Shown here piece by piece: positions 6,491 through 60,744 of a stretch of 64,000 nt of DNA. The position numbers were made by a program, and so were the translations under genes. The notes under the pieces were generated by a model, which was not told where the DNA came from, did not search any database, and saw only the letters and a list, made by a program, of their open reading frames with translations. Position 1 is the stretch's first letter. Every line of letters starts with the position of its first letter. Source of the DNA: Octopus bimaculoides (Eukaryota); NCBI RefSeq assembly GCF_001194135.2, contig NC_069006.1, positions 26,274,470 to 26,338,469 of the forward strand, written 5' to 3'.

Positions 6491-9400
6491 GCACACATAT
6501 CTTGTACTGCTTGGTTCTTTTACTTGTTTCAGTCATAGGACCGTGGCCATGCTGGGGCATCACCTTCAAGAGTTTAGTCAAATTGATCCCAGGACTTATT
6601 TTTAAGGTTAACTACTTATTTTATTGGTCACAATTGTTGTTGTTGTTGTTTAGCCCCAGGTCAGTCTTAATCCACTGAGCCTATGACCAAAGATGCTCCA
6701 TCCATGCCCATCTCCTCTTTTATTCTAATTAGTGTACATCAGGGACTACAGCATCCAAATATATTTTTCTTAAGGCTTGAAGAGGGGAAGAAGAAACAAG
6801 ATAAGGAAAGCCTTTCCTCATAAAGTGAGCTCGTCCAACCCATGCCAGCATGGAAAGCAGATGTTAAATGATGATGATGAGTTTACCTGAGATGAGGTAG
6901 AAGTAGAGACTGTAGAGAGAGAAGATGTAGGGGACAAAGCACTGCCACTGAGAGTCTGGGGGTATTTCATCTTCAAAAACATATCGAGTTTCTCCAGCTC
7001 CTGTTGGACATAAAGTTTACACTTGTAGCAGAGATTGTAGATTTTCTCCAGGTGTTCTTTGTAATCGTTCACCTCTTTGTTGTAGTTGGCCTAAACAATT
7101 TGGAAAACAAGAAAATACTATTATTAATAAGAATCCTTTATTTGCCACCAGCGCAAAGGATTAGGGGGGACAATACAGACATAAAGAGGGGGTTTACATA
7201 TGAAATGATAAAATAAAGAAAAAATATATAAGCATACAATAAAGGGACGTATATATAGTATACAAAAGTAAAAAGAAAAAAGGATGATAGAGATACAGTG
7301 CTCCAGATACAAGAGAGACCTCTAAGGAAAGGGATAATCAAGGAACCCCACTGCCTAAGACCTCCCTGAACACCAAGGGTCCTCTCCAGTTCCTTTCCTC
7401 CAACTCACGGGTCTACACTTAGAGCAGTACCATCCACTCTTGCCGTTTAGGCTATTTTTCACCCAACTTTCAATAAATTCACTGAAGGACAGCACTTCCC
7501 CCGCCACCCTTACTTGCCTTTTCAAATGGAACTTGAAAAGTCAATAAGACCTTTACCAAAGAGGAATGTATCTGTCCTCATGCCTTTCAACCTTGACCAC
7601 CAGACAACTTCTTTCACCACAGGCAAAGAAAAACAGCCTTGCCTGCCCAATTAAAGGAGGGCAACAGGACAATCATCATTGAATTTGTATAACAGTATTA
7701 ATAATAATTGACACAACATTACAAGACTAACCTCAACAAATGGTTTAAAGACAGCCAACTGTTGAACTTTGAGAAGTTGTCTTTCATTGCAGGCAGAACA
7801 GAGACCATTGGATAAAGGAACCATTTTCTGTTTGGAACAGGAAATTGGGAAGTTGAGTTCGGGAGACCATTGAGCTGGAATTGGTTTATTGTAATCACCA
7901 TCCTAAATAACAAAAAGAAAAAAAAAATTAAGAAAAAATATATCAAAATTTGGAATAGAAAAAAAATAATCAAAAATATACCAAAAGCAAAACAAAATGA
8001 TACAGGATGAAGACCACAACTGGTGTATCCATTGTTTTTTGACATGGGACAAGACTTATGCTCATTGGTTTGTTCAGTCTCAGGTATCTTTATCTTTTAC
8101 TTACTGTGGCCATGCTGGGGCACCATCTTGAAGACACGCACACACAAACACACGTTGGGCTTCTTTCAGTTTCCATCTATCAAATCCACTCACAAGGCTT
8201 TGATCGGCTTGAGGCTACAGTAGAAGATACTTGCCCTGGGTGTCATCCAGTGGGACTGAACCTGGAACCATGTGTGTGGGAAGCAAACTTCTTACCACAC
8301 GGCCACGCCTGTTCTTATGTTAATATTATTTCTAACAGATGCAAAGCCACACAATTTGGTAGAGGTGAGGGCTTACAGTTACAACTGACATTCATATTCA
8401 ACAAGTACTTCAGTTTATTTGACCCCAGAAAGCCAAGTTGATCTTGGTAGAGTTTGAACACACAACATAAAGATAAACATTACTTCAAGACATTTTGTCT
8501 GTCCCCTTATCAATCCCCTCATTACTCACAAATGTATTAATGTCACCTTTATCTTCTTACCTTTTTAAATCCATTGTATTGTTCACAGTGGGGGCAATCC
8601 CAACAATTACAATTACCAAAGGGGACGGTGGATTTCTCACTACAAAACCAACACACAACTCGAACGGGGAACTTGGCCCTAAAAATAATAAATACAAAAT
8701 AATACAGTGATACCACCAAGCTCATCTTACAAATCAATTTTCCCCATTGAAATTAACTAAAATATAATTAATCCGTTCCAACCCCGTCAAAACCACTCAA
8801 AAATAATTTTTCATGGGTTTTAAAACAGAAAAGGTAGATACAAGTAACATGGCAATTATAAAAAGAGAATGCAAAAGAAATATGCCAAAACTGACATCGC
8901 CTGTGTCGCATAAAAAGCACCAGGTCCACCCTGCTGAGTGGTTGGTGTCAGGAAGGGCATCCAGCTGTAAAAATCCTGCCAAAACAGTCACAGAAGTCTG
9001 GTGCAGGCTTCTGTCAGGTTGGCTCTTGTGAAACCGTCGCACCCATGCCAGCATGGAAGGCGAACGTTAAATGATGATGATCGTGATATATGTTTGTGGA
9101 TCTGTGTCCCCACCGCCATCGCTTATCAACCGATGTTGGTGTGTTTACGTCCCCATAATATAGAGGTTCGGCAAAAGTGACCGATGAAATAAGTATTAGG
9201 CTTACAAAAAATAAGTCCTGGGATCGATCTAATTGACAACATAAATGATTCTCAGTCTTTTCAAAAACAAAAACACCTTTTATTTAAAGGAATTTTCCCC
9301 AGACACCCTATAAAACAATAACTGACTCAAACGAAATATTCGCCCAATCCTTGCAAGCATGGAAAAACAGGCGTAAGACAAACGAACAACTTCATCCCCG

Positions 9401-10939
9401 GTTTTGAAAAGTCTGCCTTGTCAACAAATTGTGAGCTCAGCTGACAAACCTTTAAAAGTCCGAGGGGCCCCCAGCCATCCTGCTTGGGCACCACTGGACT
9501 ATACCCAGCTCCCCAAATATCTACCGTCTCGTGTTAGAAATCAATAAATGCAGTTGCTGTCTTCGATCTGTCTCCGGGATCGGCAATGAAACAAGATCTA
9601 ATTCTATATCTGTGTGGTTGGTTTTGTTTCATCTACGTCCCAACTCATTTGATCAAAAGACAACCCTGCCAGGAACATCCCGATTTTTATTTCTAGGCAG
9701 ATAGTCTACCTTGGACTATACTACCAAATGTGTTTCATTTGAAATAGTAAAGTTTAATTAATTCCTTAACCCCAGGTCAGTCCCCAACGATCAGACCATG
9801 ATCAAAAGGCATTCTAACCATGACCGTCCCAACTTTTCAGACAACAGTAGACGTGATTTAAGGGAGTTGACTGCTGTTTCTAACAGATCGAACGTTCCAC
9901 GTGATCGAACGTCAGCACGTGTATTGGTGTAGATTTAACAATCCCAATACTAACACTGTGACAATTGCACGTATAAGAAATTAATATACTACCACATGTT
10001 GGGTGGTAATCGAAGGATCAAGCGATCGAATAGCTGTTGATCCTTCTAGCCATGTCCACCCCAATTTTAATTTTTTTCTTCTTTTCATGCATAGTGTACC
10101 TAAGACTACATTAACAAAAATGTCCTGCGAGAGTAGCCTGCGGTTCGAAGACAGAAAGGCGGGAAAGATTGGCTGCTATTTCTAACAGGTCTAGCGATCG
10201 CGTAAACGTTTCCTTGTAATGTGGTAAAGATTTAATTAATTTAAACAATCACTGCAAGTCGTGTGTGAGGTTTAAGGCAAGACAAAAGATACTTAATAGT
10301 GACAACCATATTTTTCTAGAAATGTCCGTGAAATATACATATCTGTCTGTCTCTGTTACTCGAAAACAGAAGCTAAAATCTATTGTTTCTAATGTTAAAT
10401 CCTTGCAATCGGTGATTAATTAAAGTATATAAAGAAAAGCGGTAAAGTGTTTCGTTCGGACTTTGGGAGTTTAAAAAGCAAAGATGCAGACATTCCGAGT
10501 TAATTAAAGTATTTAATGAGGTGTGTCGTGTTTTTATTAATGAAAATAAAGAAAATAATGGTCCAGATGGACTATACGTAATGTGAACCTAATAATAGAA
10601 AAGAGTAAAATTAGAGACGGAAGATATATATTTGTATAATATAGAGAGATATTTCTCTAATGCAGATATATCTTCCTAAATCTGTCGAGTGTCCGTCCAA
10701 GATCGTGGCTTCGTGACTCCGACACGTGTTGGCGCCAAATTAAAAGAAAAAAAACAAGAAAATAAAACAAAATTCTGAAAAAAAAAAAATTTCGATGCAA
10801 ATCAATTGAAAGAGTAACAACAAGAAGCTCACCTAATTAATTTAAATATTACAATAGTACAACCAAATAGTGCAAAAACTGCGAGAAAAGCGGCGACGAT
10901 CTGTAAATAAAAGAAATACTCCATGGTGGACATGGACAT
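1700..10939 (-). CDS. TMEM201: Transmembrane protein 201 (Samp1/Ima1-family inner nuclear membrane protein), 10 coding exons, 724 aa
   Basis: Exons: 10833-10939, 8561-8678, 7732-7902, 6887-7090, 5894-6138, 5106-5300, 4367-4941, 3315-3422, 2275-2529, 1700-1896 (2175 nt). All introns are GT-AG and phases are compatible. Ima1_N motifs are present: VCWFC..VPFGNCNCWDCPHCEQYNGF-DGDYNKPIPAQ, LCSACN, YKEHLEKIYNLCYKC. These are followed by TM segments, a Ser-rich region with IAPARL and CLVDSTT, and a C-terminal TM FSIAVNVVLIL. An alternative start at 10924 has a perfect CCACCATGG context. Confidence 0.93.
7330..7680 (-). mobile_element. Decayed L1/Tx1-type LINE 3' fragment in TMEM201 intron 3
   Basis: With frameshifts, the minus strand reads VVKEVVWWSRLKG..LIDFFKFHLKR.VRV..EVLSFSEFIE.W, resembling Tx1-clade ORF2 C-termini as I recall them. 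Confidence 0.5.
8130..8310 (-). mobile_element. tRNA-derived SINE, family B
   Basis: Head gtggtaagaagtttgcttcc..ggttcagtcccactg, body ending gaaactgaaagaagcc plus a (TG)n tail. Further copies at about 25965-26140(-), 33270-33470(+), 51030-51130(-), 60105-60180(+) and 60945-61045(+). Confidence 0.7.
8880..9082 (-). mobile_element. SINE/LINE-tail repeat, family D
   Basis: catcatcatttaacgt..ccatgctggcatggg..gctggatgcccttcct..gtgcttttatg. Copies at about 19770-19910, 27690-27845, 33855-34035, 51170-51295 and 51735-51900. Confidence 0.7.
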
Positions 10940-10940
10940 C

Positions 10941-10980
10941 TAACGGAAGTGTCGGCATCTATAACGGAAGTGACGTCAAT
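10941..10980. promoter_or_regulatory. TMEM201 proximal element: tandem ACGGAAGT (ETS) sites, the second overlapping a full CRE
   Basis: TAACGGAAGTG occurs at 10941 and 10962, and TGACGTCA at 10971-10978, immediately 5' of the TMEM201 ATG. Confidence 0.55.
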
Positions 10981-13900
10981 CAGCATGGCAGCTGATGGAC
11001 GACGTTTCAGGGTTTGGGGTTAAATTTTCCATCAAATATTGACTAAAACAAACACAGCGAGAGACTTTCGGGGGATTAGTAAATATTTTAGCCTTGACTG
11101 GTGGTGATTCGGGTTTTGCACGATAACGGTTTCGATTCCTGGACTGCGCGGTGCGTCTTGAGCAAAACACTTTATTTCAAGTTGCTTTGCGATCCGAGAT
11201 ATGGAACACCTTTGACCTGTTGTTTATATATATATACATACATACACTTGCTCGTTGTAACTACACATGTCTTTGTTTTTCTATAAATTTGAACCATATA
11301 TATATAGAAAATAAATCCCTAGACTCTCCAGCAAGAAATTAATGACCCGTCTTTCTCGGATTCAAGAGTCTACCATTATTATATAGGCAATGCTTGGTAT
11401 CGACAGACAAAATAGTCGAGTTCAAATCTCACCCAGGTCGACTTTACGTTTCATTTTTCGGTAAATTTTTATCCTTTCACCCGCACGATTTTCACTAAGA
11501 AAAAAAAATCTGATTTTTTGTGTGGAATCAAGTACCCTGACCGCCTAATATGCTGTAAACTCCTTATTTCCGTTCGGAGAAAAAAAGTGGGCGACAGGAC
11601 CACCACCCCGTCATCGTTGGAATATTTTTTTTCGTTGAATGAACTACGGTGACCTCTTAATACGCTACAATACTCTTTTGGGGGTCTGGAAAACGGAGTG
11701 GGGTGAGGTGGAAGCTTCGGAAATTTCACCCCCACCCCATTTAATCTTTTCACCCTCACGATTTTCACATCTCCGTATTTTTCGCAAAAAAAAAAATTGT
11801 AGAAGAGTAAAAATTGAAGAATTTTGGTCGGGGGGAATTAAAATTTGAAAGTACCGTTTTTAAATAAAGTTTTAAATATTTTTATGAACACTTTTCTGGA
11901 ACCTCCACAAGGTCCACATGAAAGGGATTGCACACATATACCTATATAAATTCCTGTACATATCAAATAATATATATCTCTCACTAAATAGAATACTTTT
12001 ATGTTGATCCCACTCATGACACAACAGTATACATGTATATATAAATGTGTGTGTGTGTGTAATATGTCAACATTATTTCACCACTTTACAGACAATGGCA
12101 GACTGAAGAACAATACATTGAAGAAATCAATGAGTTTGGAATGTGAAATATCTTTAGGAATTTGCTGCTATTGTTTGGGTACAGAATAAAAGAAAGCTTT
12201 TGATAGCACTAGTCCACCATGGAAACCAAAAACAGCAAGGATTGTGGAACCATTTCAAACAACAGGAGATATATTGAATGAAATGCCAAAACCAACCAGT
12301 TTCCACCTATCCATCTATCTGTCTATTTACCTACACATACACATAGACATGCATGTACACACATACACATACACATGTATCTATGCACTTTTAGCATTAC
12401 AAACGAAAAACAATATAGTAGAGGTTATTTACTTCAGCTTTAGTAATATTCTTCCGTCTTCTTCCTTGGTTCCATTCCTGGTTCTTGTTGTACTCCTGGG
12501 GTTTTAACTTTGGTTACATTTTAGTCTTTTTAACTTTGATTATATTGGTCATATTCTACTTTGACCACATACATTTTGTTCATCACACACACACACAAGA
12601 TTTATGCATTTACCTTGGAAAATCAGACAGATTAACACACATCCAAATACACACCTGTATTCATGTGTGTGTGTGAGTGTGTATTTGTAGGATACATGAT
12701 GCTTGCATCCCAAGTGTGAGATGATACATGTCGGAGAGACATGGACTGCAAATGTGGAAGAAGTATAGAGACTGGAAAACTTTGAGTTGGTTCTGCTGCA
12801 TATTTAAAGACAGTCGTGTGTGAATAATGAAGAGGAGGAGAGATGAGTGGAGGTTTCAGTTGTGTAAAAACAAGAGGAGAAGCAAAGGTGTGTGAACAAG
12901 GAAGAAGTGAGCCCAGTGGAAAGGGACCACAGAAAAGTGGATAGGGGCCATAGAAGAAGATGTGAAACAAGTGAAAAAGAGTCCCAAACAGGGAGATGGA
13001 AAGAGAAATGGCAAAACTGCAGCAGACAGTGAAATATCAGAGATAACACATCTGATGATTGGGAGCCTGGGAAAATAGATGTAAAATAGTGAGATTCTTT
13101 TCATTAATATGCTTGTGTGTGTGATTAAAAGCAAAAAATATTAGGTAAATAAAGAATTCAATAGGTGAAGTAAATGAAATATTTCATAAAATATCGATGA
13201 AATAAGCACACACACGAGTAATGTAGAGGAATAATGTAAAGGTTCAATGTATAGGGGTAATGTATAGGGTTGATTCAAAGATCTAAATATCGCAATGTAT
13301 AGGGAGAAAGGTATAGAAACATCAGACAAGAGAAAAGTCCAAAAGCGAGATAGATGAGGGGAAGAATTATTGATCTTGCTAGAGAGTTTGGCCCCAGATT
13401 AGTTTCCATCAACCTTAACACAATCAAGCCATGATGGAAGCTACTATAGGGTCACTTAGCCCACAAGAAATAGCAACTAAATTCCCTTTATGTCTTTAAA
13501 AGGTGAAGGATTTATTGGATATTGTGTTTATAGATATCTATAAAAACAAAAACAAGATGGTCATGGCTGGAAAGCCTTTAACTATAGTCTGCTCCATCAG
13601 GCATTATTTAGGAGTAAGTAATGGCAACAACTTCCGCACAATTTTCTTGACAGCTGTAAATATGTACCCTGTAAGGTACCGTGGATATCACTAGGTACCA
13701 CAGGAGATAGAACTGGCTCACTGGCAAATTCGTAACACTGAGTGAAACGCTTAGCGGCATTTTATCCGTCTTTATGTTTTACATTCTGAGTTCAAATTCT
13801 ACCTAGGTCAACTTTGCCTTTTATCTTTTCGGGGGTCGATAAATGAAGTCCCAGTTGAGCAGTGGGGTCAATGTAATCGACTTACCCACCTGCCTCAAAC

Positions 13901-14104
13901 ATTTGAAACCAATAGATTCAGGTGGTGGGCTGGTCAAATCATTAGGACATGGGCAAAATGCTGACCAATATTTCGTCTGCTTTAATTTCTGAGTTTAAAT
14001 TCCTCCACAATCCACATTGTCTCTCATCCTTTTGGGGTCAATAGAATAAGTACCACCTCAGCCCTGGGGTCATTGTAATTGACTTTCCTGCCTCTCCCAA
14101 ATAT

Positions 14105-14253
14105 NNNNNNNNNNNNNNNNNNNNNNNNNNNNNNNNNNNNNNNNNNNNNNNNNNNNNNNNNNNNNNNNNNNNNNNNNNNNNNNNNNNNNNNNNNNNNNNN
14201 NNNNNNNNNNNNNNNNNNNNNNNNNNNNNNNNNNNNNNNNNNNNNNNNNNNNN
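14105..14253. other. Assembly gap (N run)
   Basis: N run. Others at 25330-25357, 28062-28122, 33760-33769, 35708-35730 and 36715-36732, mostly beside (TA)n or G runs. Confidence 0.98.
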
Positions 14254-14403
14254 TATATATATATATATATATATATATATCAAGCTGTCTACAAGTAATT
14301 TGGAAAGTAGAACATCTCAGCTGTCAATAGTTATCAAACTTCCATTTTTTCTAACTTCCTTTCTCAGTAACAAATCTTCCATTCCTAGTTTCACAACCTA
14401 ATT

Positions 14404-15207
14404 TCATTCCTCTGCAGACGTCATTTTCTTCAACACCTCTTCTTCTAGATTTGCGTGATTCCCACTCATGGACTCCATTATGTCTTCCCCAGAAACTTCC
14501 AGAATAGTCTTCAATTGAGGGCAATATCCAAACATTCTCCTCTTCTGACATCTACAATTCAGCTGCTTACATTTTTGTCTGACCACATTTCTCCTTTGTG
14601 GAAGATTATTTAGTTTGCGTGTTGAATCAACAGTATATTGAAATACATTTTTCTTGCAGGCACCACACGATGTCACATATCTTCTGTTAAAAGCACACGC
14701 CGTATTTTCCCTCCTAATGTTACACGCGAACATATTTCTTCTGAAAGTACATGGTGATATGACACTCCTACTAAAACTGCACGCTGATATATTTGTTCGG
14801 GTGGCAGGACACATGAAAGCGCCTTGTCTGTTGATACTGCACAAAGAAACACTTCTTCGACACGAAACTATCTCATCTGTATAAAGAGAATCAACGTCAA
14901 TTGAACAACACATACACAAATTCTTGTTGGATGGAATATGGACTTGTTTGGGTGCACACTTGGGGTTACAGCCCACGGAAGTTTTCTTGCTGGGGCCACT
15001 ACATGAGTACATATCCCTCTTAACAATGATTTCATCGGCTGTGGAACTGGACTCAGAACCAACAGAACTTCTCCTGTTAAAGTTACATGAGAATAACCGA
15101 CTGCAAAGTCGCCTGAGACGAGAAAAGACATTGGTCAGGCGTCGCCGTCGACTAACTTTGTCTTCCATCCCCCCACACAGAGATGGAACAGGCGACAACG
15201 AGGACAT
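14404..15207 (-). CDS. Intronless Cys/Arg-rich orphan protein, 267 aa, with an internal 9-10 aa repeat
   Basis: 804-nt ATG-to-stop ORF in non-microsatellite sequence, much longer than background ORFs here. It has 22 Cys and 29 Arg, with periodic Cys at aa 123, 133, 143, 153, 162, 171 and 181. I recognise no family. Confidence 0.65.
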   Translation of the reverse strand: MSSLSPVPSLCGGMEDKVSRRRRLTNVFSRLRRLCSRLFSCNFNRRSSVGSESSSTADEIIVKRDMYSCSGPSKKTSVGCNPKCAPKQVHIPSNKNLCMCCSIDVDSLYTDEIVSCRRSVSLCSINRQGAFMCPATRTNISACSFSRSVISPCTFRRNMFACNIRRENTACAFNRRYVTSCGACKKNVFQYTVDSTRKLNNLPQRRNVVRQKCKQLNCRCQKRRMFGYCPQLKTILEVSGEDIMESMSGNHANLEEEVLKKMTSAEE

Positions 15208-16809
15208 TCGTCGTTTTTTTGGTGGGGGATAAGGGGGAGTGGCTTTCTTTTCTTTCTTTTTGTTTTGCTTTTTTTGTGTCCAATTAAAACGTAAGGAATG
15301 GTTGAGACAGTAATTAATTAATGAACTTAAGACAAAGATACAAATTAGTTTAAATGAATGGACTCATAAACGAGAAAAGCACTCAAGTGGAAGTTAAAGG
15401 AATGAGTTAATTAATTAAATATATTAATTGGAAGAGGGCAATAGATTAAGAAAGAAAGAAAGAAAAGGAAGTAATAGAGGGAGAAAGTTATCAACAAGTT
15501 AATCTGATGAGTGCGTGGATCGTTGAAATCAATAGATCGATAAGTAATCAATCAGTCGAACACATAAATGGAAGGATAGAGATAATAAAGAAAAGATGGG
15601 AAAAAATCAATTGACAGATGAAGTTTAAAATGGTAAATTAATGATAATAAAGAACAATGAATCAGTTGAAAGTAGAGAGATCGATAAGCCATGTTTAAAA
15701 ACATCGATCTGAGATCGATTTGAGGCAGAAAAGATGTGTGCAAAATCTTCTTCCCTTGTTAACTTTAGAAACGAACTAATTCAAATGTTTATCACAAACG
15801 GTTTAAATAAAAGATTCTGTTTAAAGTTTTGCAAACCCAATTTGTGTTAACCTCTTCCAATATTCCTGATAAAACTTTCATTTCGTTCTAAACGTATCGG
15901 AAAAACATCGTCGAGTTTTAGTCCTGGTTTCTTCCTTCTTGAATTTAACTGGGGAAAACTCAATAACAAACTGTTGCTAGATGGATCTTCTCCAAAACTA
16001 AGAAACTGGAAATATTAATTATTCATGTTTTAGGTGAGCAAAATAAGGAGGAAGAAGAAGACGACGACGACATGTGATGAGAGATTTTCTTAAAAAAAAA
16101 AAAAAAAGAGCGTCGCAAATTGTAACGTTTTTGTAACGATTCTTAAAACAAAAACAACTTCAAAAACAGAATATATTTCGTTGTAAGTGAAGAATAAGGA
16201 AATGGTACGAGAGCAGGTAAGAAAAATCAACAATGATAGATCTAAAGGACAGAAATTTAGCTTAAATAAATCATTAATGAAATTAAAAGATGTAATTAAA
16301 CATTAGGTTTTATAACCCCTGTTTTTATTATAAACTCTGTTAAATATTTCTGACGATAAACTTTTACCAGGAACCTAGGATGTGTTCAGAAAGTGTCACA
16401 GCTTCAAAGTTCTTTGGTTTTGGTCTTCTATTGTAAATCGATTGAATTTTTATTAACGAAATAAAATTGACCCTTAAATAGATTTTGTGTCCACATTTTC
16501 AAAGGTTAGACGGGTGGAAAATGGGTTCACAGACAACAAAAACGATGGTGAAGCGATGAGATTCAGGTAGGGACCGAGAAGGACCCTGTCGAAGTTGACA
16601 ACTACAGTACAAGACCACATTGTGGAACAAGGAGACGATTCCGACCTCAAGGCTGATTTTTATGTTAAAAATAATATAAACTTACTCTGAGGTTATCTTT
16701 CGGCATTAACGGACTGTCGGCATCAAAGGAGTCACCTTTTCCCTACTAGTCCGTTTAATTGCGAAGATACTGGTTTAGTGTGTGTAGATACTTATACAGA
16801 GATGTGTAT

Positions 16810-16995
16810 TCCAGAACCGTGTACTGCACCTGTGCACCAGAACCAAGGTCTGCAAGACAAGAAGCATGTCAAGCTGCTGGAATGCTTCCACAAGAGATGT
16901 CATGGAAGGAACACGTAACCAACAACGAAGGCCTCCATCTGTCCCGAATATTGAAGCCTTGCTGCTGTTCAGGCAGCTCAGATGGTTCGGATCCG
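16810..16995 (+). mobile_element. RTE-clade LINE ORF fragment
   Basis: Frameshifted HVKLLECFHKRC / SWKEHVTNNE / VPNIEALLLFRQLRWFG, the typical post-RT RTE signature. Confidence 0.75.
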
Positions 16996-17864
16996 GTTGT
17001 TTCTCTCTTTTCCTTTTGCCACTTATATTCATTTATCCTCTTTTCGTATTTTTATTTCTATCGACCGTGCGATGTGCTAAACGAACCATTTCCTCGTCAC
17101 CTCTCCTGATCGCACGCACTTTACATGCTCATGTCCAGAAGAACGGATGAATATCGGATAGATTCGACGGCTGTCTAGCAATAGCAGGGTCCCTCAGAAA
17201 TTACGGGTTGATGCCTGGCATATTGGAAGACCAGTGGGAGCGAAGCATCCCTTAGCTTTTACTAAAGCGTGTCTCTAGGAGAAGGTCAGTCTGATATAAA
17301 ACCAAACATGCAGGGAATGGCATTGGGCATTTTAGCGATCTTTTGCTTGCGCCTGAAGCCATGGCGCTCCCACAATTCTGAGCCTTCATATTAACACTGG
17401 ATGTGATAGCCTGGCTCGCCTCTGGAAGCGCTACTTTGGCCTGTGATCTACAAGGAAGATTACTTTAGGTTACTTTTTAGTTTACTGATTATTTTGAAAA
17501 CAATGAATAATATTTGTTTTTTTAGTAAATTTTTATTAAATTCATGAAAAGACATTAATTTTAACAGATCCCGCTTTGAGGAATCCAGCCATCACACTGA
17601 GACCTCGAAATAGGTCGACAAAACCATTATTAATAAAAGTTTATTACATTAAACGTAACACAAATCTTCAATCACGTGACTCTAGAAGTAATAATAGTTT
17701 CTTACAAACAGAACACTACAAGTTAATAGTCCTTTTTTAAGACAGCAGGACACTATTTGGCTGCTATTTCTACAAGATCAAGTATAGCGGAAGAGTTACC
17801 CCCCCCTGAATTTATAGTTACAGGCAGTTGATCTCTCTGTATATTTTTTGTATTCAAGAGAATA

Positions 17865-21477: not shown

Positions 21478-24400
21478 TCAGTTGCTTTCTCCTGTGACTA
21501 TGGCTGGTTTCTGAGTTATCTTACGTTTAAAATATCGTTCCTGTGCATCGAGGAGGGACTGGCCAACCGTGTGCTTGGCATATTTGGGGGGAATGTCATT
21601 TTTGGAGTCAGATTTCTCTTTAGCAATGTCACTGTTCACTTTTGACTCATTACTTGGAGGGGGTGAGGGCAGGCGTGGTGGGGGAGAGCAACGAGCAGAT
21701 GGAAGTGGAGGGGGGGAGGGAGAGGAAGAGACTGGTGGGGCAGGCAGACAGGGCTGCTCGGATACAATTGGGGGTGTGTCTAAATCGATAACCTCAGGGG
21801 TCTTGCTTTCTTTCTCTTTGTCATGATTGCGATGGTGGTGGTGACGATCACTGCTGCCACCACCATCACGGCTGTTATTATTATTATTATTACCCTGGTC
21901 ATCATCATGATTGTAATCGCGAGAACGGTGATCACGGGTATTGTCTTCACCATCGTCATCACCACCACCATCGGACGATGACGACGACGATGATGATGCG
22001 TTAATAGGTATGACCTTCACAGGGGTCCTGGATTTTGGTTTATCTCCCATTCTTGGTTGTCTTTCATTACTGCTCACGCGGGGCAGTTCTTTCTCTGCTG
22101 ATCGCTTCCGATCCCTTGATGATGGTCTTCCACTGTGCCTTTCCTCAGAGTGACCCCTGGCACTGGTGTGGCTTGAAGTGGATGCTTTGTGAGATGACGG
22201 TCGACTGCGTTCGTTCCTGTCTGACCTGTCTCTAGACCTTGAGCGAGATCTCCTCTCATATCTTTTCTCTCTCGAATGTGAACGAGATTTCCTCTCATAC
22301 CGGTTGAACCTGCCTCTGTTGCGAGATCGAGAGCGAGACCTTCGATTGTATCGGTCAAACCTGTTTCGATCCCTTGATCGAGACCGAGATCTGCGGTTGT
22401 ATCGAATGAACCGGGGTCTGTTTCTGAAGTTGAAGTAAGGCTTCCTTTTAAATCGGTCAAATCTCCCGCGATCTCTGGAACGCGACACGGAACGCCTGTC
22501 TCTAGACCGTGACCTCTTGTCCCTCGATCGCGACCGTTTGTCTCTTGATCGAGACCGTCTGTCTCTGGAGCGAGACCGTCTGTCTCTTGATCGGGATTTT
22601 CGGTCCCGTGAGTGAGACCGTGATGATTTCCTATCCCGATAATCCCTTCGGCGTACACGGTCATCTCTGGATCTTGACCGAGAGAATCTATCTCGACCCG
22701 AAGTCTCTGACTTCTTGTGTTGCGGCCTCCGCTCCTCAGATTTCGAACGAGAACGAGAGCGAGACTTTGATTTGGAGTGATGGTTACTACGACCATAGCC
22801 TCTTTCGTCAGTGTGCCTCGAGCGACTCACTGGGCTTGATCTTGTGACAGGGGCAGACTTCTTACGCTTCCGCCTGTCGTCATCACTCTGCGAGTCATCC
22901 GAATCTGAATATTTACTCCTCTGACTCGTAAAACTGCTGTGTTTCTTACTTCCGGAAAGCTCCGGCTTCTGTTTATCAGCAGATTTACCCCAACGACTTC
23001 CTTTGCTTTCTTTCCTCTCCTTAGCGCTGTCATTTGATGACGATGACGACGACGAAGAAGACGAAGAAGAAGATCTCCGTTTTGACCCTTTTTCACCTTT
23101 CGTCACATTCGGATGATGTCTGTCTCCGTCGTGGCTGCTCACTTTCATCTCAACATCTTCAATTTTCAAAAGATTTTTCTTTTCTGCCCTAAAATAGAAA
23201 ACAGAAATAAGACTAATTAATTAAACACATAATGATGCTCGTTAACTACAATAAATACAAACAAAAAAAACAATTCTAAAAGACCCAAACCTCTTCCTAA
23301 ACCTGCCAACTGCCATCAACCAACACCTTTTTTTTAACATTTTTGCTTGTTTCAGTCACTTGACTGTGGCCATGCTGGGGCACAGCCTTTGAAAATTGTT
23401 TTAGTCCAAATTTACGTCAACCAAATCCACTGAAGATGTTGTGAAAGCTTACCATAATGTTTAATCTAAATACAGTGGAATTTTTTTACCCTCACAAACA
23501 CTCAATGGGTGTATGTGTGTGGGGGGAGGTCAGTTTTAATTAGCATTCTTAAAGTATAATTAATCCAATCATCAACTTACAATCCTTCTTCGACATCCTC
23601 TGGTTCCTGTTTCACCGTTGTTGTCTTCTTACTGTAACAAAACGAAAAACAAAAGGTAAATATTGTTCCTGATAAAAACAGAGTCAAAAGACAAAATTTT
23701 TCTGTTCATCAAACAGAAAAAAAAATGTAATAATTTTCTCCCCAAAAGATAGAATTCTAACTACATCTGTTCTTGCATCCATTTTCAATGGTATGTCAAA
23801 TCTATGTGAAATGCCTCCCTATTCACAAAAAGAGTCTGTTACCCAATATATGACAAGCTTCTTTCAGTTTTCATCTACCAAATCCACTCACAACACTTGC
23901 TCAACATGCCACACCATGGGATCCAGAATCAGGTGGTTGGGAAGCAAGCTTCTTACCACACAGAGCCATGTTCCATTTTTATTGTTGTTGTTATTTACCA
24001 AAATAAGGAAACAACTATATTTACCTCCCATCACCTCCTCCTCCGCCATCGTCGTCAGCATTGTCAGCTTGTTGTGGGTCTGTGCCACTTGTCTGTTGAT
24101 ACAGGAACCTGTAGAAGCCACTCAGATCCTTCTGTTTGGTGACGTCCAACAAAGCTGGAGGGGACAAAAAAAAAAATGAAACAAAAGTCAGATAAAAAAA
24201 CAGAGAAATGCAAACAAAAAAACAAGTAAATAAAAATCAAATACATATGGTTGTTGTTGTTGTTTAGCCGAAGATCAGCCCAGATGATCCCTGGTCAAAG
24301 ATATTCCAGCCATGAATGATTATTATGATGATGATGATGACGACTATCAAAGCTGTTTTGTTTTTTACTAGATCTATGTCCTTCCATCTTTTAAGATGGC

Positions 24401-27400
24401 TGGGTGTGATTAGAGGGAAATTTGGCTGTTATCTTTAGCAGGTCTGCAAAAACTGAATAAATGTTTTCTTTGTTAGCTTGGACAAGTGTTCAGGTTATGT
24501 AAACATCATGTTCACAATATGCAAGGTATTATAACCCTACACCTTTCCAGCCATGGCTCTCATGCCATAGACACAGATTTAGAACAACAGCAGCAGTTTC
24601 TGATTCAGGTACAAGGTCAGCAATTTTGAGGGGAGGGGGTAAGTCAATTGACTTACCTCATAAGGCGGAGGTAATAAAATAATGATCGTTAACACCATCG
24701 CCTCACTAATTACAACCACAACAATTAGCACATCAAGCAACCTCCTTTACCTTCCATCTCGGCTTCTTTCTTCTCTCTCTCTTCTTCTTCCTGTAGTTCC
24801 AGTAACTTCTTCTTGTAGGCTGATGTAACAAACTCCTCCTTGTCTTTAAACTCTTCACCCTCCGCCTCACGTTCCTGCTGTATCTTCCTCTCCGTACGTT
24901 TCTCCTGTTCCTTTTTCCTACTCGCAGCTGCTTTCAATAGACCCTCAATATACTTGGGCTGCAAAAACAAACAGATTTACAGTGAACTAATTAAAAAGTT
25001 GCCAAAGAAGAGATTAACTAATTAAGCCATCATTGTAGGGTAGATGTGAAAGGCCAGATTAGGTCAGTTTGAACATACAACAATATATTTAAGCCAGAAA
25101 TGGCCAGTTTAAATGCTAAAGGCTTAAATACATACCTTTTTGTCTGCTTTGGTTTTTAACAAAAGATCAGTTTTGATTTTTTCTGATTGGATGTCATCAT
25201 AGATTTTGTCATATTCATAAACTGAAGGATCATCCTGCAGTGCTTTATCGATCTCTAGCTGTGCCTACAACACCAGAGATCAGAGGTTTTAATAATTGGC
25301 TTTTTAAAATGGAAAGATACTTTTGAGTTNNNNNNNNNNNNNNNNNNNNNNNNNNNNGGGGGGGCAAGAATTTCAAGAATTCAGAGGACAACATTTAAAG
25401 TAACACAGCACCAAAACCTTCAAAGTCACACCAAATGCCAGGCTTCACAATCTCTCAAAACCTTTCCTAGTGGGTCGACATACATAAATTAGCTAAACCT
25501 GCACCCCCCTAAAAGAAAAACCCTTCCTCTTCAAGACCACAAAATACTTGACCTCCAACCAGCAGCTGACCGTCATCGAAATTTAAGCAACACTAGAGGG
25601 CAGCACCTATACTCATTTGTTATAGAAGACGTACACCAGCTGGGATTGGGGACGGGGGGCACACCCATCCCTACATCTATTCTCTCTCTGGTTATATTTC
25701 ATTTAGGGTTTAAAAAGCAAAATATTTACAAATCATTTCTCACCTGTTTTTTCAGTTTGTTTTTTCGAGATTCTTTCTGTAATGACGTACTGAATACTCC
25801 TTGTTCATCCTAGAGAAGAGACAAACGACACAGATATTATTACTGTATCAATAATGGTTAGGGTTAGGGCACTCACCATTGCCAGATCAAACAGCATGTT
25901 GTGTTCTTGAGCAAAACCCTTTTATTTCACATTGCTCCAGTGCTGTGTGTGTGGACCAGCAAAAGGGGTCACACACACACAAACAGGCTTCTTTCAGTTT
26001 CCGTCTACCAAATCTGCTTGCAAGGCTTTGGTTGGTCCAGGGCTATATTAGAAGACACTTGCCTAAGGTGCCATACAGTGGGACTGAACCTGGAACCATG
26101 AGGTTAGGAAGCAAGCATCTTATCACACACCCATGCCTACATCTAATGAAAATGATGATGACAGTCAGCCTATGGTGATAATGATGATGATGATGATATA
26201 AAATAAACAAGTGTGTCACAGATGAACCACTTTCTGTGATTGAATAACTGTTTTGGACAATCACTTAGTCTGAATTTGGGTGTGGTCTTTCATCATGTTT
26301 TCTATATACAGCTTAGGGTATCAGGTTGGATGTAGGGGAGGGAGAGGGGCTTCTAGTATTTCATTTTGTGGTTAAGTAGTTAGCAAACATGGAAGGCCAT
26401 CTGAGCCAGCAGTTAGATAAAACAGACGAAAAATAATTGCTCTTCTATTATCACAGAGATTGTATATGTGAAAGGAATATGTGAGATGCTCCCCACCACC
26501 ACTTGTGCCACCACTGCAGTCAAACAAAGAAAGAATATTTGGAACAACCAAAAAAAAAAAAAAATGTTAAAATAAAAGTTGAATGGAATGAATTGTGCAG
26601 TCTGGCTTTTTGTTTCAGTTTAATTTAATGAAATAATTCAAAAAGAAAGGAATCACATTGTTAATGAAGTTTATATGAAAGAGGGCCACATCCAACACAG
26701 ATAATCGACCTGCGTTATGTTCAAACAAGCCAGATCCAGCCTCTTACACCAACCCTACAATGTTATTCTACAAATGAAAAAAATCACATCACCAAAATAT
26801 GGAAGCTTTGAGATAATACGATGAAATGAAAACGATGTAAAATAAATAAGCATCTGACAGCGTAATCGGAATGCTAAAGGGTTGAATGGTTATCGTTGTT
26901 GTTGTTGTTGGGGTGAGGTTTGACCTAGCTTCCCAGCTATGGTTCAACCATCTAATAGATGTCAGGATCATTGTACATCTCATACATTAGCTTATGTGTC
27001 ACAGCGCATGCCCCTATACTACTACTACTACTACTAACAGAACTAAAATAATGAAATGTCACCATTACAAGAGCACTACATTCAATATACTTCCATCATT
27101 ACAATAACGCCACATGGAGTATACATACATCACTGTCATCTCCAAAAATACTGGGTTTTCCACGAACAAATCCATTCTGTTTCTTTGAAAAGAACAATCC
27201 ATATCTAAAAGATAAAAATAAAATTTTCTTATATTTCACAAGAACGGATGTCATTTCACACACACACACAAAAGGTATCAGAAGACTACACAGGTATGAA
27301 CCAGTGATGTGAATGGATGAGGACAGTAGTTTGAAGAAATGGTGTTCATTTAATGTGGCTGGAACCCGCAGAAGACGAAGACATGTGAACAACGTGGTGA

Positions 27401-60600: not shown

Positions 60601-60744
60601 GGTGATTACGGTATTGATATGGGACGTAACATCATCCATGGTAGTGATGGAACTGAATCAGCCAATCATGAAATCAATTTATGGTTTACTAAGGAAGAGC
60701 AAATCACTTGGAAACCAGCTCTAAGCAACTGGTTGTACGAGTAA
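57606..60744 (+). CDS. NME1: Nucleoside diphosphate kinase, group I (NME1/NME2/awd-like), 2 coding exons, 149 aa
   Basis: Exons 57606-57652 (MERTFIAVKPEGVQRG|) and 60342-60744 (450 nt total). Catalytic NIIHGSD, HY, FF, ART, GAT, TIRGD and C-terminal WLYE are all present. The symbol indicates the family; it would be a co-ortholog of the vertebrate group I NME genes. Confidence 0.96.

What the first reader, a model, noticed from the sequence alone, without database searches (positions are those of the whole stretch)
14404..15207. Intronless orphan protein with a Cys-anchored pentapeptide-like repeat (possible beta-solenoid)
Seen: a 267-aa ORF with 22 Cys and 29 Arg. Residues 117-184 (nt about 14656-14859) repeat every 9-10 aa: CSINR-QGAFM-CPATR-TNISA-CSFSR-SVISP-CTFRR-NMFA-CNIRR-ENTA-CAFNR-RYVTS-C, with a further CNFNR at aa 41. 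Established: pentapeptide-repeat (Rfr-fold) proteins place a small residue (A/C/S/T) and, two positions later, F/L/I inward, giving C-x-F-x-x units. Inference: this may be a short lineage-specific beta-helix with an outward Arg ladder (nucleic-acid binding or disulfide-crosslinked structural role, for example in sperm). It lies between two intron-rich housekeeping genes yet has no introns.
Basis: partly seen in the sequence, partly recalled or inferred. Interest (0 to 1): 0.7.

Follow-up and report, generated by a model that had tools for sequence, protein, structure and literature searches.

The report
Octopod-only cysteine-rich repeat protein gene
This is a real but unannotated single-exon gene, found so far only in octopods, that encodes a basic, cysteine-, serine- and arginine-rich protein with a short repeat array; it shows no sign of the proposed beta-solenoid fold and its function is unknown.

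Summary
The 267-aa ORF (14404-15207, minus strand; 22 Cys, 29 Arg) and its six tandem C-x-Φ-x-R units spaced 9-10 aa apart are real and far beyond chance. It is a genuine protein-coding gene. A sister-species contig keeps the ORF (75% aa identity, dN/dS 0.32, 0.17 in the repeat core). Argonauta hians has a 201-aa single-exon ortholog in the same place, between an NSRP1 gene and an Ima1/TMEM201 gene on the same strand. No other relative exists among 1.8 billion representative proteins, and there is no Pfam or PDB match. What the family shares is an N-terminal basic helix and a C-terminal VRQKCKxLNCRCQKRK motif. The repeat array is mostly absent from Argonauta. The beta-solenoid idea is unsupported: no pentapeptide-HMM hit, the 5-residue register is broken, half the pentads have bulky polar inward residues, and AlphaFold2 is unconfident (pLDDT 29-31). 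RNA covering the gene appears in only one of about 18 RNA runs. In that run the adjoining RNA is spliced onto exon 2 of the downstream TMEM201-like gene, so the transcription unit is not simply intronless. A germ-cell, disulfide-crosslinked or nucleic-acid-binding role is plausible but only inferred.

The parts
14404..15207 (-). Coding sequence of the orphan protein (267 aa plus stop), uninterrupted
   Evidence: ORF list. Colinear with sister-species contig L001 over 14254-15474, with no intron. dN/dS 0.32 and codon-position differences 44/33/71. Only 0.7% of neutral 17%-diverged copies keep the ORF open.
14656..14862 (-). Cys-anchored repeat array, aa 116-184: six 9-10-aa units with consensus C-[SNTA]-[FI]-x-R-x-[NV]-[IVM]-x-x, flanked by CRRSVSL and CGAC
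   Evidence: Every unit is orthologous in the sister species. All 9 Cys and 6 Arg anchors are unchanged against 14 changes elsewhere in the array (p=0.02). dN/dS is 0.17-0.18. The array is mostly absent in Argonauta.
15091..15159 (-). N-terminal basic amphipathic segment, aa 17-39 (RRRRLTNVFSRLRRLCSRLF), conserved in all three species
   Evidence: Alignment A2 invariant columns R20, R23, L24, F28, S29, R32, R33, C35, L38, F39. It is modelled as a helix in both AF2 runs, at low confidence.
14491..14601 (-). C-terminal conserved motif, aa 203-239 (PQRRNVVRQKCKQLNCRCQKRRMFGYCPQLKTILEVS), the best-conserved block of the family
   Evidence: Alignment A2 is nearly invariant from Q204 to S239 between this window and Argonauta. 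The only database signal here is a sub-threshold DTX3L_a-b match (18.9 bits against a cut-off of 27), which P0001 and P0002 do not share.
14284..16099 (.). Unspliced RNA contig of run X1 covering the whole ORF, 892 nt upstream and 120 nt downstream (depth 23); the contig itself is unstranded
   Evidence: Depth drops from 23 to 3 at a T18 tract at 16092-16109 on the minus strand. The putative 892-nt leader contains 8 upstream ATGs.
12433..14104 (-). X1-specific exon (depth 33) downstream of the ORF, ending in a GT donor that is spliced to exon 2 of the Ima1/TMEM201-like gene
   Evidence: Joint 8677/12432 (cut +1), CT..AC on the plus strand, which is GT..AG on the minus strand, seen in X1 only. 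The exon has an in-frame stop and no ATG before the junction. Among RNA runs only X1 holds it.
14105..14283 (.). Assembly gap (149 N, 14105-14253) plus a (TA)n microsatellite (14254-14283), 120 nt 3' of the stop. It breaks every contig, so continuity of the two X1 contigs cannot be shown
16686..17004 (-). Second X1-specific upstream exon (depth 7), spliced directly to exon 2 at 8678 and skipping the whole ORF region. It appears to derive from the antisense of a LINE reverse-transcriptase tail fragment
   Evidence: The loose end AACACACAACTCGAACGGGGAACTTGGC at 16685 matches the plus strand of 8651-8678. The donor is GTAAGT and the exon is non-coding in the Ima1 frame. The plus-strand ORF reads ...EALLLFRQLRWFG. 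Its words are shared with other species.
8560..8678 (-). Exon 2 of the downstream Ima1/TMEM201-like gene (zinc-finger part of Ima1_N), the acceptor for all three alternative upstream exons
   Evidence: Pfam Ima1_N, E=2e-24.
10833..10950 (-). Canonical first coding exon of the Ima1/TMEM201-like gene (ATG at 10939, MSMSTMEYFF..., a hydrophobic and probably transmembrane segment). It is used in X10, X5 and X6 and was not seen in X1
21481..24976 (-). Upstream neighbour: NSRP1-like gene (NSRP1_N exon at 24728-24976, RS-rich last exon at 21481-23220)
   Evidence: Pfam NSRP1_N, E=2.2e-24. The same gene order is found in Argonauta hians locus L002.

Best explanation
A genuine, taxonomically restricted (so far octopod-only) single-exon protein-coding gene lies between NSRP1 and Ima1/TMEM201. 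Its product is a 30-kDa, strongly basic (pI 9.6, net +24), Cys-, Ser- and Arg-rich, low-complexity protein with no signal peptide. The conserved family core is an N-terminal basic amphipathic helix and a C-terminal VRQKCKxLNCRCQKRK...GYxPxLxTI motif. The six-unit C-x-Φ-x-R decapeptide array is an elaboration of the Octopus-type lineage. It is held under purifying selection there and is mostly absent from Argonauta. These points are shown. Expression is confined to one library. In that library the locus is part of a library-specific transcription programme that also drives two alternative, non-coding 5' exons of the downstream TMEM201-like gene. One of those exons lies just 3' of the ORF. This is shown, except that the two contigs have not been proven to be one RNA. 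The mechanism is inferred. The protein is largely disordered on its own. It most likely acts as a cationic scaffold whose regularly spaced cysteines form intermolecular disulfides or bind metal, and whose arginines bind nucleic acid or acidic partners. This is the mode of action of Cys-rich basic proteins of differentiating male germ cells. The single expressing library is most likely gonad (testis). The confidence value covers the whole statement: about 0.9 for the gene-level claims and about 0.3 for the inferred mechanism and tissue.
For: Gene reality:
- The ORF is retained in a sister species at 75% aa identity with one in-frame 2-codon indel, while the flanks carry 13-18 gap columns.
- dN/dS is 0.32 (pN 0.14 against pS 0.35), and third codon positions carry 71 of 148 differences.
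- Only 0.7% of neutrally diverged copies keep the ORF open.
- The Argonauta hians ortholog P0002 (E=7e-14) is a single-exon gene between an NSRP1_N gene and an Ima1_N gene on the same strand. The same order in the window is confirmed by Pfam.

Lineage restriction:
- Exhaustive HMMER over 1.84 billion representatives and three seeded searches found no other relative.
- There is no Pfam or PDB match.

Not a transposon:
- Depth in DNA run X2 is about 9-11, the same as in the flanks.

Conserved core and array:
- Alignment A2 shows the conserved N- and C-terminal blocks and the missing array in Argonauta.
- Array constraint in the Octopus-type lineage: dN/dS 0.17, and 15 of 15 Cys/Arg anchors are invariant.

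Expression:
- X1 contigs cover the locus at depth 23-33, and introns of the neighbouring gene have depth 0, so this is RNA and not DNA contamination.
- X5, X6, X10, X11, X13 and X16, and raw reads of X7-X9, give nothing over the ORF.
- Splice joints 12433>8678 and 16686>8678 occur only in X1. All three pieces are held by X1 alone among RNA runs.

Disorder and basic character:
- AF2 pLDDT is 29-31; composition is.

Precedent:
- Octopod sperm chromatin uses a Cys-rich, disulfide-bonded protamine (Giménez-Bonafé et al. 2002, as cited in PMC11607694).
Against: - The tissue of X1 is unknown because labels are coded. 'Testis' rests only on analogy and on the restricted, read-through and TE-exon-rich transcription pattern.
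- The X1 contig over the ORF is unstranded. Its 5' edge abuts a genomic T18/A18 tract, so an antisense or internally primed RNA is not formally excluded.
- If the transcript starts near 16099, the leader has 8 upstream ATGs, and the ORF's ATG has a weak context with C at -3.
- There is no proteomic or ribosome-profiling evidence.
- Low AF2 confidence with 2-3 sequences does not prove disorder.
- Mean hydropathy and charge sit on the Uversky order/disorder boundary (0.448 against 0.446).
- Nonsynonymous divergence (0.14) is only modestly below the substitution divergence of the flanks (0.17-0.18).
Confidence: 0.6

Rival explanations
1. One reading: the array folds into a short pentapeptide-repeat-like (Rfr-type) right-handed beta-solenoid, with Cys and Phe/Ile pointing inward and an outward arginine ladder.
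For: A hydrophobic residue recurs about every fifth position across 12 consecutive 4-5-residue units (I, A, A, I, F, I, F, F, I, T, F, V), and Cys occupies i-2 of every second unit. The anchors are conserved between the two Octopus-type species. The second AF2 model puts a few short strands in aa 139-152, at pLDDT of about 30-36.
Against: - No Pentapeptide family is reported at E<=10 for the whole protein or for the isolated array of either species, and the PDB profile search is empty.
- Unit lengths of 10, 10, 10, 9, 9, 10 shift the pentad register twice.
- The intervening pentads have Q, T, S, N, E, R at i-2, and four of these six are too bulky or charged for the Rfr interior. This is read from the sequence against established Rfr-fold rules.
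- The array is only about 60 aa, roughly three coils.
- AF2 shows no solenoid, with pLDDT 21-39.
- The array is not conserved in Argonauta.
Confidence: 0.06
2. The ORF is mainly a regulatory upstream cistron. In the expressing tissue a promoter near 16.1 kb makes one long RNA (leader exon 16099 to 12433) spliced to TMEM201 exon 2. Translation of the 267-codon ORF, or the leader itself, serves to silence or redirect TMEM201 output, and the peptide matters less.
For: X1-specific RNA lies on both sides of the assembly gap at similar depth (23 and 33), and the downstream piece is spliced to exon 2. The canonical ATG-bearing exon 1 is not seen in X1. Both alternative exons lack an in-frame ATG, so full-length Ima1/TMEM201 cannot be made from them. 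All pieces are co-restricted to X1.
Against: The amino-acid sequence itself is under purifying selection (dN/dS 0.17-0.32), and specific motifs are conserved as far as Argonauta, which a purely cis-acting ORF would not need. Argonauta annotators called it as a separate gene 3.35 kb upstream of the Ima1 gene model. Continuity across the gap is unproven. Candidate poly(A) signals exist at 13986 and 13516.
Confidence: 0.12
3. A metal-binding protein: the regularly spaced cysteines, together with CMCC, CGAC and CKQLNCRC, coordinate Zn, Cu or Fe-S clusters, as in a metallothionein-like or zinc-scaffold protein, rather than forming disulfides.
For: The protein has 22 Cys and no signal peptide, so it sits in a reducing compartment where free thiols usually bind metal. 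Clustered C-x-C, C-x2-C and C-x4-C-x-C motifs are conserved (C98, C100, C101, C181, C184, C213, C218 and C220 are invariant between the two Octopus-type species; C213, C218 and C220 also in Argonauta).
Against: The protein has two His and no known zinc-finger spacing or Pfam zinc-domain hit. Array cysteines are single and 9-10 residues apart, which is unlike metallothionein C-x-C/C-C clusters. Cys content of 8% is far below metallothioneins.
Confidence: 0.12
4. Not a functional protein: a chance or decaying ORF inside a tissue-specific non-coding leader or read-through RNA.
For: It is expressed in a single library. The leader is long and rich in upstream ATGs, and the Kozak context is weak. 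The exact protein is absent from public protein collections. The segment aa 65-100 evolves neutrally, with dN/dS 1.05.
Against: The ORF is open in three octopod lineages. dN/dS is well below 1, third positions are enriched in changes, and the only indel is in frame. The neutral survival probability is 0.7% even for the closest pair.
Confidence: 0.04

Closest known systems
Pentapeptide-repeat proteins (Rfr fold; Pfam Pentapeptide families such as PF00805)
   Same: A small residue is followed two positions later by a hydrophobic one (C-x-F/I), and a roughly 5-residue hydrophobic periodicity runs across about 60 aa.
   Different: There is no HMM match. The register is broken by 9-residue units. 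Alternate pentads have polar or charged residues at the inward position. No solenoid is predicted. The organism is eukaryotic, and the array is not conserved within the family.
Cys-rich basic proteins of spermatids and sperm: the octopod Cys-rich protamine (Eledone cirrhosa), eutherian protamine P1, ODF1 and Drosophila Mst84D/87F (C-G-P repeats), cylicins and perinuclear-theca proteins
   Same: It is basic, rich in Cys, Ser and Arg, low in complexity, and has short Cys-anchored repeats. It evolves fast, is lineage-restricted, has an intronless coding sequence, and is expressed very narrowly. This comparison rests on my own knowledge plus the citation in PMC11607694.
   Different: There is no sequence similarity. 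Arg is only 11% (protamines exceed 45%) and the protein is 267 aa long. The repeat unit C-x-Φ-x-R-x-x-Φ-x-x is unlike C-G-P or CCxPx. Testis expression is not demonstrated here.
Twin Cx9C (CHCH) proteins
   Same: Cys-to-Cys spacing is C-x9-C or C-x8-C.
   Different: CHCH domains have two Cx9C pairs on antiparallel helices. Here seven cysteines follow one another in a Pro-containing, beta-prone segment that is not predicted helical, and there is no CHCH Pfam hit.
Argonauta hians hypothetical protein Ahia01_000490000 (P0002)
   Same: It is the ortholog: same position between NSRP1 and Ima1/TMEM201, single exon, shared N-terminal basic helix and a near-identical C-terminal VRQKCKRLNCRCQKRK...GYxPxLxTI motif.
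   Different: It is 201 aa and has at most two degenerate Cys-anchored units instead of six or seven. It is 30-39% identical. It is uncharacterised.
Read-through (conjoined) transcripts and TE-derived alternative promoters of germline tissues
   Same: A library-specific RNA runs past the ORF and splices into exon 2 of the next gene. A second alternative first exon derives from an antisense LINE fragment.
   Different: Whether the ORF-bearing RNA and the spliced leader are one molecule is unproven, because an assembly gap and a (TA)n tract break the contigs.

Membership tests
Pentapeptide-repeat (Rfr-fold) proteins | Significant match to a Pentapeptide profile (PF00805, PF13599, PF13576, PF01469) | tested here: not met
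   hmmscan at E<=10 on the whole protein and on the isolated array of both species returned no Pentapeptide family.
Pentapeptide-repeat (Rfr-fold) proteins | Uninterrupted tandem 5-residue register (four pentads per coil) | tested here: not met
   Cys-to-Cys unit lengths are 10, 10, 10, 9, 9, 10, so two units are 5+4 and shift the register.
Pentapeptide-repeat (Rfr-fold) proteins | Small residue (A/C/S/T) at i-2 and L/F/I at i in essentially every pentad | tested here: not met
   Position i-2 reads C, Q, C, T, C, S, C, N, C, E, C, R, and position i reads I, A, A, I, F, I, F, F, I, T, F, V. Only the Cys-led pentads conform, and Q, N, E, R at i-2 do not (read from the sequence).
Pentapeptide-repeat (Rfr-fold) proteins | Right-handed quadrilateral beta-helix structure | tested here: inconclusive
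   Two AF2 runs (MSA depth 2 and 3) gave mean pLDDT 29.3 and 31.2, with no solenoid and the array at pLDDT 21-39. The shallow MSA limits what this shows.
Twin Cx9C / CHCH | Two Cx9C pairs on a helix-turn-helix, with a CHCH profile match | tested here: not met
   There is no Pfam hit and no helix is predicted in aa 116-184.
Protamines / sperm nuclear basic proteins | Small size with very high Arg (or Lys) content | tested here: not met
   The protein is 267 aa, with Arg 10.9% and Lys 6%.
Protamines / sperm nuclear basic proteins | Spermatid-specific expression and presence in sperm chromatin | not testable with these tools
   Only one RNA library holds the gene, and its tissue label is coded.
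Transposon-encoded ORF | Multiple genomic copies and a TE protein domain | tested here: not met
   Depth in DNA run X2 is 9-11 across the ORF, as in the unique flanks. There is no Pfam domain. The syntenic position is conserved in Argonauta.
Retrogene (processed copy of an intron-containing parent) | A detectable parent gene elsewhere | tested here: not met
   No paralog or other homolog was found in 1.84 billion representatives or 5.8 billion clusters.
Octopod NSRP1-TMEM201 intergenic orphan family (defined here) | Single-exon ORF between NSRP1 and Ima1/TMEM201 on the same strand | tested here: met
   Window. Argonauta L002.
Octopod NSRP1-TMEM201 intergenic orphan family (defined here) | N-terminal RLxxVFSxxRRxCxxLF segment and C-terminal VRQKCKxLNCRCQKRKxxGYxPxLxTIxExS motif | tested here: met
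   These are invariant columns in the three-species alignment A2.

The most novel reading that the evidence does not exclude
The gene arose in the octopod stem inside the far-upstream, germline-specific leader region of TMEM201 and still shares a transcription unit with it, as the 5' cistron of a conjoined mRNA. In Octopus-type species its Cys/Arg decapeptide array forms a previously undescribed disulfide-stapled cross-beta or solenoid-like scaffold used in gamete architecture.
Probability: 0.08. Interest if true: 0.6.

Novelty: new variant of a known kind. Interest (0 to 1): 0.35.

Why it matters
The analysis adds a real, selected protein-coding gene that is missing from public protein sets for this genome. 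It defines a small octopod-restricted family by synteny, with two conserved motifs and a lineage-specific repeat expansion. Such taxonomically restricted, narrowly expressed, Cys-rich basic proteins are candidates for reproductive (gamete-structure) innovations in cephalopods. The locus also shows how a young gene can be entangled with alternative, partly TE-derived promoters of a housekeeping neighbour. It does not currently provide a new fold or mechanism.

Tried and rejected
- **Pfam and PDB searches.** I scanned the whole protein, both orthologs, and the isolated N-terminal, array and C-terminal segments against Pfam, and searched PDB sequences with the single protein and the profile. The only result was a sub-threshold DTX3L_a-b match (15-19 bits against a cut-off of 27) on the C-terminus of the window protein. 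The orthologs do not share it, so I treated it as noise.
- **P0003.** This third HMMER hit (E=6e-4) translates a perfect 30-bp x 9 minisatellite (LTLCGISRQG) in a metagenome contig. I rejected it as a homolog.
- **AlphaFold2.** I ran it twice and both models were unconfident. I did not run Foldseek, because matches to models at pLDDT of about 30 are meaningless.
- **DNA-level tandem repeat and recent unit duplication.** Both rejected.
- **Transposon ORF and retrogene.** Both rejected.
- **Identifying the sister-species run (SRR11869391) or its tissue from the literature.** Nothing was found.
- **Raw RNA reads of X7-X9.** They gave zero depth on the ORF, so strandedness could not be obtained.
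Full report
**1. Observation**

The window has an ATG-initiated ORF of 267 codons at 14404-15207 on the minus strand. It encodes 22 Cys, 29 Arg and 36 Ser, with pI 9.56 and net charge +24.

From C116 to C184 (nt 14656-14862) the cysteines follow each other at gaps of 7, 10, 10, 10, 9, 9, 10 and 3 residues. Six consecutive units start with C-x-x-x-R: CSINR, CPATR, CSFSR, CTFRR, CNIRR and CAFNR. A seventh, CNFNR, is at aa 41.

In 200,000 composition-preserving shuffles, a chain of six 9-10-residue Cys gaps appeared once. Seven C-x-[FILVMA]-x-R motifs never appeared.

Tandem Repeats Finder sees no DNA repeat in the ORF. The units do not share codons beyond what the amino acids require. The periodicity is an old, protein-level feature.

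**2. Is it a gene?**

Evidence from the sister species:
- The word-seeded search of 5.8 billion proteins found one relative, P0001 (265 aa, 75% identity), on a 1,216-nt Logan contig, L001.
- L001 is colinear with window 15474-14254 at 80.5% identity, so neither species has an intron in or near the coding sequence.
- Nei-Gojobori dN/dS is 0.32 overall (pN 0.14, pS 0.35). It is 0.17 in aa 101-185, 0.24 in the N- and C-terminal blocks, and about 1.05 in aa 65-100.
- Differences by codon position are 44/33/71. The coding sequence has a single in-frame 2-codon indel, while 267 nt and 150 nt of flank carry 13 and 18 gap columns.
- Only 0.7% of simulated neutral copies at this divergence keep the ORF open.

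Evidence from Argonauta:
- An exhaustive HMMER search of 1.84 billion representative proteins with the two-species profile added P0002 (E=7e-14) and P0003 (E=6e-4).
- P0002 is 'hypothetical protein Ahia01_000490000 [Argonauta hians]'. It comes from the chromosome-level assembly BAAFZT described in PMC12682272.
- It is a single-exon gene lying between an NSRP1_N gene and an Ima1_N gene on the same strand.
- The window has the same order, all on the minus strand. The NSRP1-like gene has its NSRP1_N exon at 24728-24976 (E=2e-24) and an RS-rich exon at 21481-23220. Then comes the ORF. Then comes an Ima1/TMEM201-like gene with exons at 10833-10950, 8560-8678, 7731-7901 and 7000-7089 (Ima1_N, E=2e-24).
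- Conserved synteny makes P0002 an ortholog.

What was excluded:
- P0003 is the translation of a perfect 30-bp x 9 minisatellite and is spurious.
- A three-species profile found nothing more.
- The exact window protein is absent from a 15-billion-protein collection, so it is unannotated.
- DNA-run depth over the ORF equals that of the unique flanks, so it is not a repeat or transposon.
- No paralog exists, so it is not a recognisable retrogene.

**3. What is conserved**

The three-species alignment shows two blocks shared by the family. One is an N-terminal basic amphipathic segment, R-L-x-x-V-F-S-x-x-R-R-x-C-x-x-L-F (aa 20-39). The other is a nearly invariant C-terminal block, QRRxxVRQKCKxLNCRCQKRKxxGYxPxLxTIxExS (aa 204-239).

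The Cys-anchored array is largely missing from Argonauta, which has at most two degenerate units. It is therefore an elaboration of the Octopus-type lineage, or was lost in argonauts.

Within the Octopus-type pair every unit is orthologous. All 15 Cys and Arg anchor positions are unchanged, while 14 of the other 54 array positions differ (p=0.02).

**4. Fold**

- No Pfam family reaches threshold. No Pentapeptide or CHCH family appears even at E<=10, for the whole protein or for the isolated array of either species.
- PDB sequence searches with the protein and with the profile are empty.
- AlphaFold2 with 2- and 3-sequence alignments gives mean pLDDT 29.3 and 31.2 (pTM 0.16 and 0.20). The array sits at pLDDT 21-39 and no solenoid appears. 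Only the N-terminal and C-terminal helices recur between runs.
- Read as pentads, the array does have a hydrophobic residue at most central positions. However, two units are 5+4, which breaks the register. The pentads that do not start with Cys carry Q, T, S, N, E, R at the inward i-2 position.

The Rfr-type solenoid is therefore not supported. The shallow alignment means it is not rigorously excluded. The sequence looks like a basic low-complexity protein that is disordered on its own.

**5. Transcription**

Which runs hold the locus:
- Among the runs of this organism, only X1 (a small 2015 transcriptome-sized contig set) holds the locus as RNA. X2-X4 are low-coverage genomic DNA.
- X1 has an unspliced contig over 14284-16099 (depth 23) and another over 12432-14104 (depth 33).
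- Introns of the neighbouring gene have depth 0 in X1, so this is RNA and not DNA contamination.
- Three 2026 raw-read RNA runs give zero reads over the ORF, and six other transcriptome contig sets laid on the locus give no contig over it.

Splicing onto the downstream gene:
- The 12432-14104 contig carries 28 nt of the TMEM201-like exon 2. This is a GT..AG (minus-strand) splice from 12433 to 8678, seen only in X1.
- A further X1-only exon, 16686-17004, is spliced directly to 8678. It skips the whole ORF region.
- That exon overlaps the antisense of a LINE reverse-transcriptase tail fragment and shares words with other species.
- The canonical first exon of the TMEM201-like gene (10833-10950) carries the ATG and the hydrophobic N-terminal segment. 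It is used in X10, X5 and X6 and was not seen in X1.
- Both X1-specific exons have in-frame stops and no ATG before the junction.
- All three X1-specific pieces are held by X1 alone among RNA runs.

So the coding sequence is intronless, but the locus is embedded in a library-specific transcription programme that reads into the downstream gene.

What remains open:
- An assembly gap (14105-14253) and a (TA)n tract (14254-14283) break all contigs. It cannot be shown whether the ORF-bearing RNA and the spliced leader are one molecule.
- The ORF contig is unstranded.
- Its 5' edge coincides with a T18 tract and a depth drop from 23 to 3.
- A transcript starting there would have 8 upstream ATGs.
- Candidate poly(A) signals lie at 13986 and 13516.

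**6. Mechanism (inferred)**

The protein has no signal peptide. It is strongly basic and has NLS-like Arg/Lys runs and 22 cysteines, many regularly spaced. It contains fast-evolving segments, is lineage-restricted, has an intronless coding sequence and is expressed very narrowly.

These are the hallmarks of structural and chromatin-associated proteins of differentiating male germ cells, which act through charge-driven binding and intermolecular disulfide cross-linking. Octopods are known to use a Cys-rich, disulfide-bonded protamine (Giménez-Bonafé et al. 2002, cited in PMC11607694).

I therefore favour a cationic scaffold that can be cross-linked through its cysteines, acting in gonad. This is an analogy and has not been tested.

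**7. Comparison and novelty**

The protein belongs to no described family. It resembles known Cys-rich basic sperm proteins in kind but not in sequence. It fails the tested defining features of pentapeptide-repeat proteins, CHCH proteins, protamines, transposon ORFs and retrogenes.

I rate it a new variant of a known kind: a taxonomically restricted, Cys-rich basic repeat protein. Interest is moderate. The gene is real, selected and unannotated, and its locus architecture is instructive. No new fold or mechanism is demonstrated.

Noticed in passing
window 16686-17004 (-) and 12433-14104 (-), joined to 8560-8678 (-): In run X1 only, the Ima1/TMEM201-like gene uses two alternative upstream exons in place of its ATG-bearing exon 1 (10833-10950). 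Both are non-coding in the Ima1 frame, so those transcripts cannot encode the normal N-terminal, probably transmembrane, segment. They may yield an N-terminally truncated isoform or no protein.
   Followed up: partly
window 16690-17150 (+): The plus-strand ORFs read like the C-terminal tail of a LINE reverse transcriptase (...KEHVTNNEGL...EALLLFRQLRWFG...). The X1-specific exon 16686-17004 lies antisense to it, and its 31-mers occur in RNA and DNA runs of three other organisms (codes B, C, D).
   Followed up: partly
window 13778-14060: A SINE-like high-copy element reaches depths of thousands in DNA and RNA runs, with many variant 'joints' and loose ends. It sits in the X1-specific exon just 3' of the ORF. 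Further high-copy repeats lie at about 8000-8400, 8800-9200 and 12000-12200.
   Followed up: no
window 14105-14283: An assembly gap of 149 N abuts a (TA)n microsatellite only 120 nt downstream of the stop codon. The sister-species contig also ends in a TA/TG-rich tract at the same place. The 3' UTR of the gene is therefore incomplete in the assembly.
   Followed up: yes
window 14908-15015 (aa 65-100 of the ORF): This segment evolves at dN/dS of about 1.05, and two of its cysteines (C80, C84) are not conserved in the sister species. It appears to be a neutral or rapidly changing linker between the conserved blocks.
   Followed up: partly
L003 10254-10524 (metagenome contig ERZ25084518): A perfect 30-bp x 9 minisatellite translates to LTLCGISRQG x 9 and mimics the SLCSINRQG unit, giving HMMER E=6e-4. 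This is a warning that short Cys/Arg repeats attract spurious profile hits.
   Followed up: yes
window 21481-23220 (-): A 580-codon open exon is extremely rich in Ser/Arg/Lys/Asp (RS-domain-like, with poly-Ser). It is presumably the C-terminal exon of the NSRP1-like gene and has no Pfam match.
   Followed up: no
window 60304-60741 (+): A single open exon encodes most of a group-I nucleoside diphosphate kinase (Pfam NDK, E=5e-48), ending ...SNWLYE.
   Followed up: no
window 14254-14403 and 15208-15474 compared with L001: Substitution divergence of the flanks (17-18%) is lower than synonymous divergence in the coding sequence (pS 0.35). Either the UTR-like flanks are constrained or synonymous sites are unusually mutable here.
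   Followed up: no
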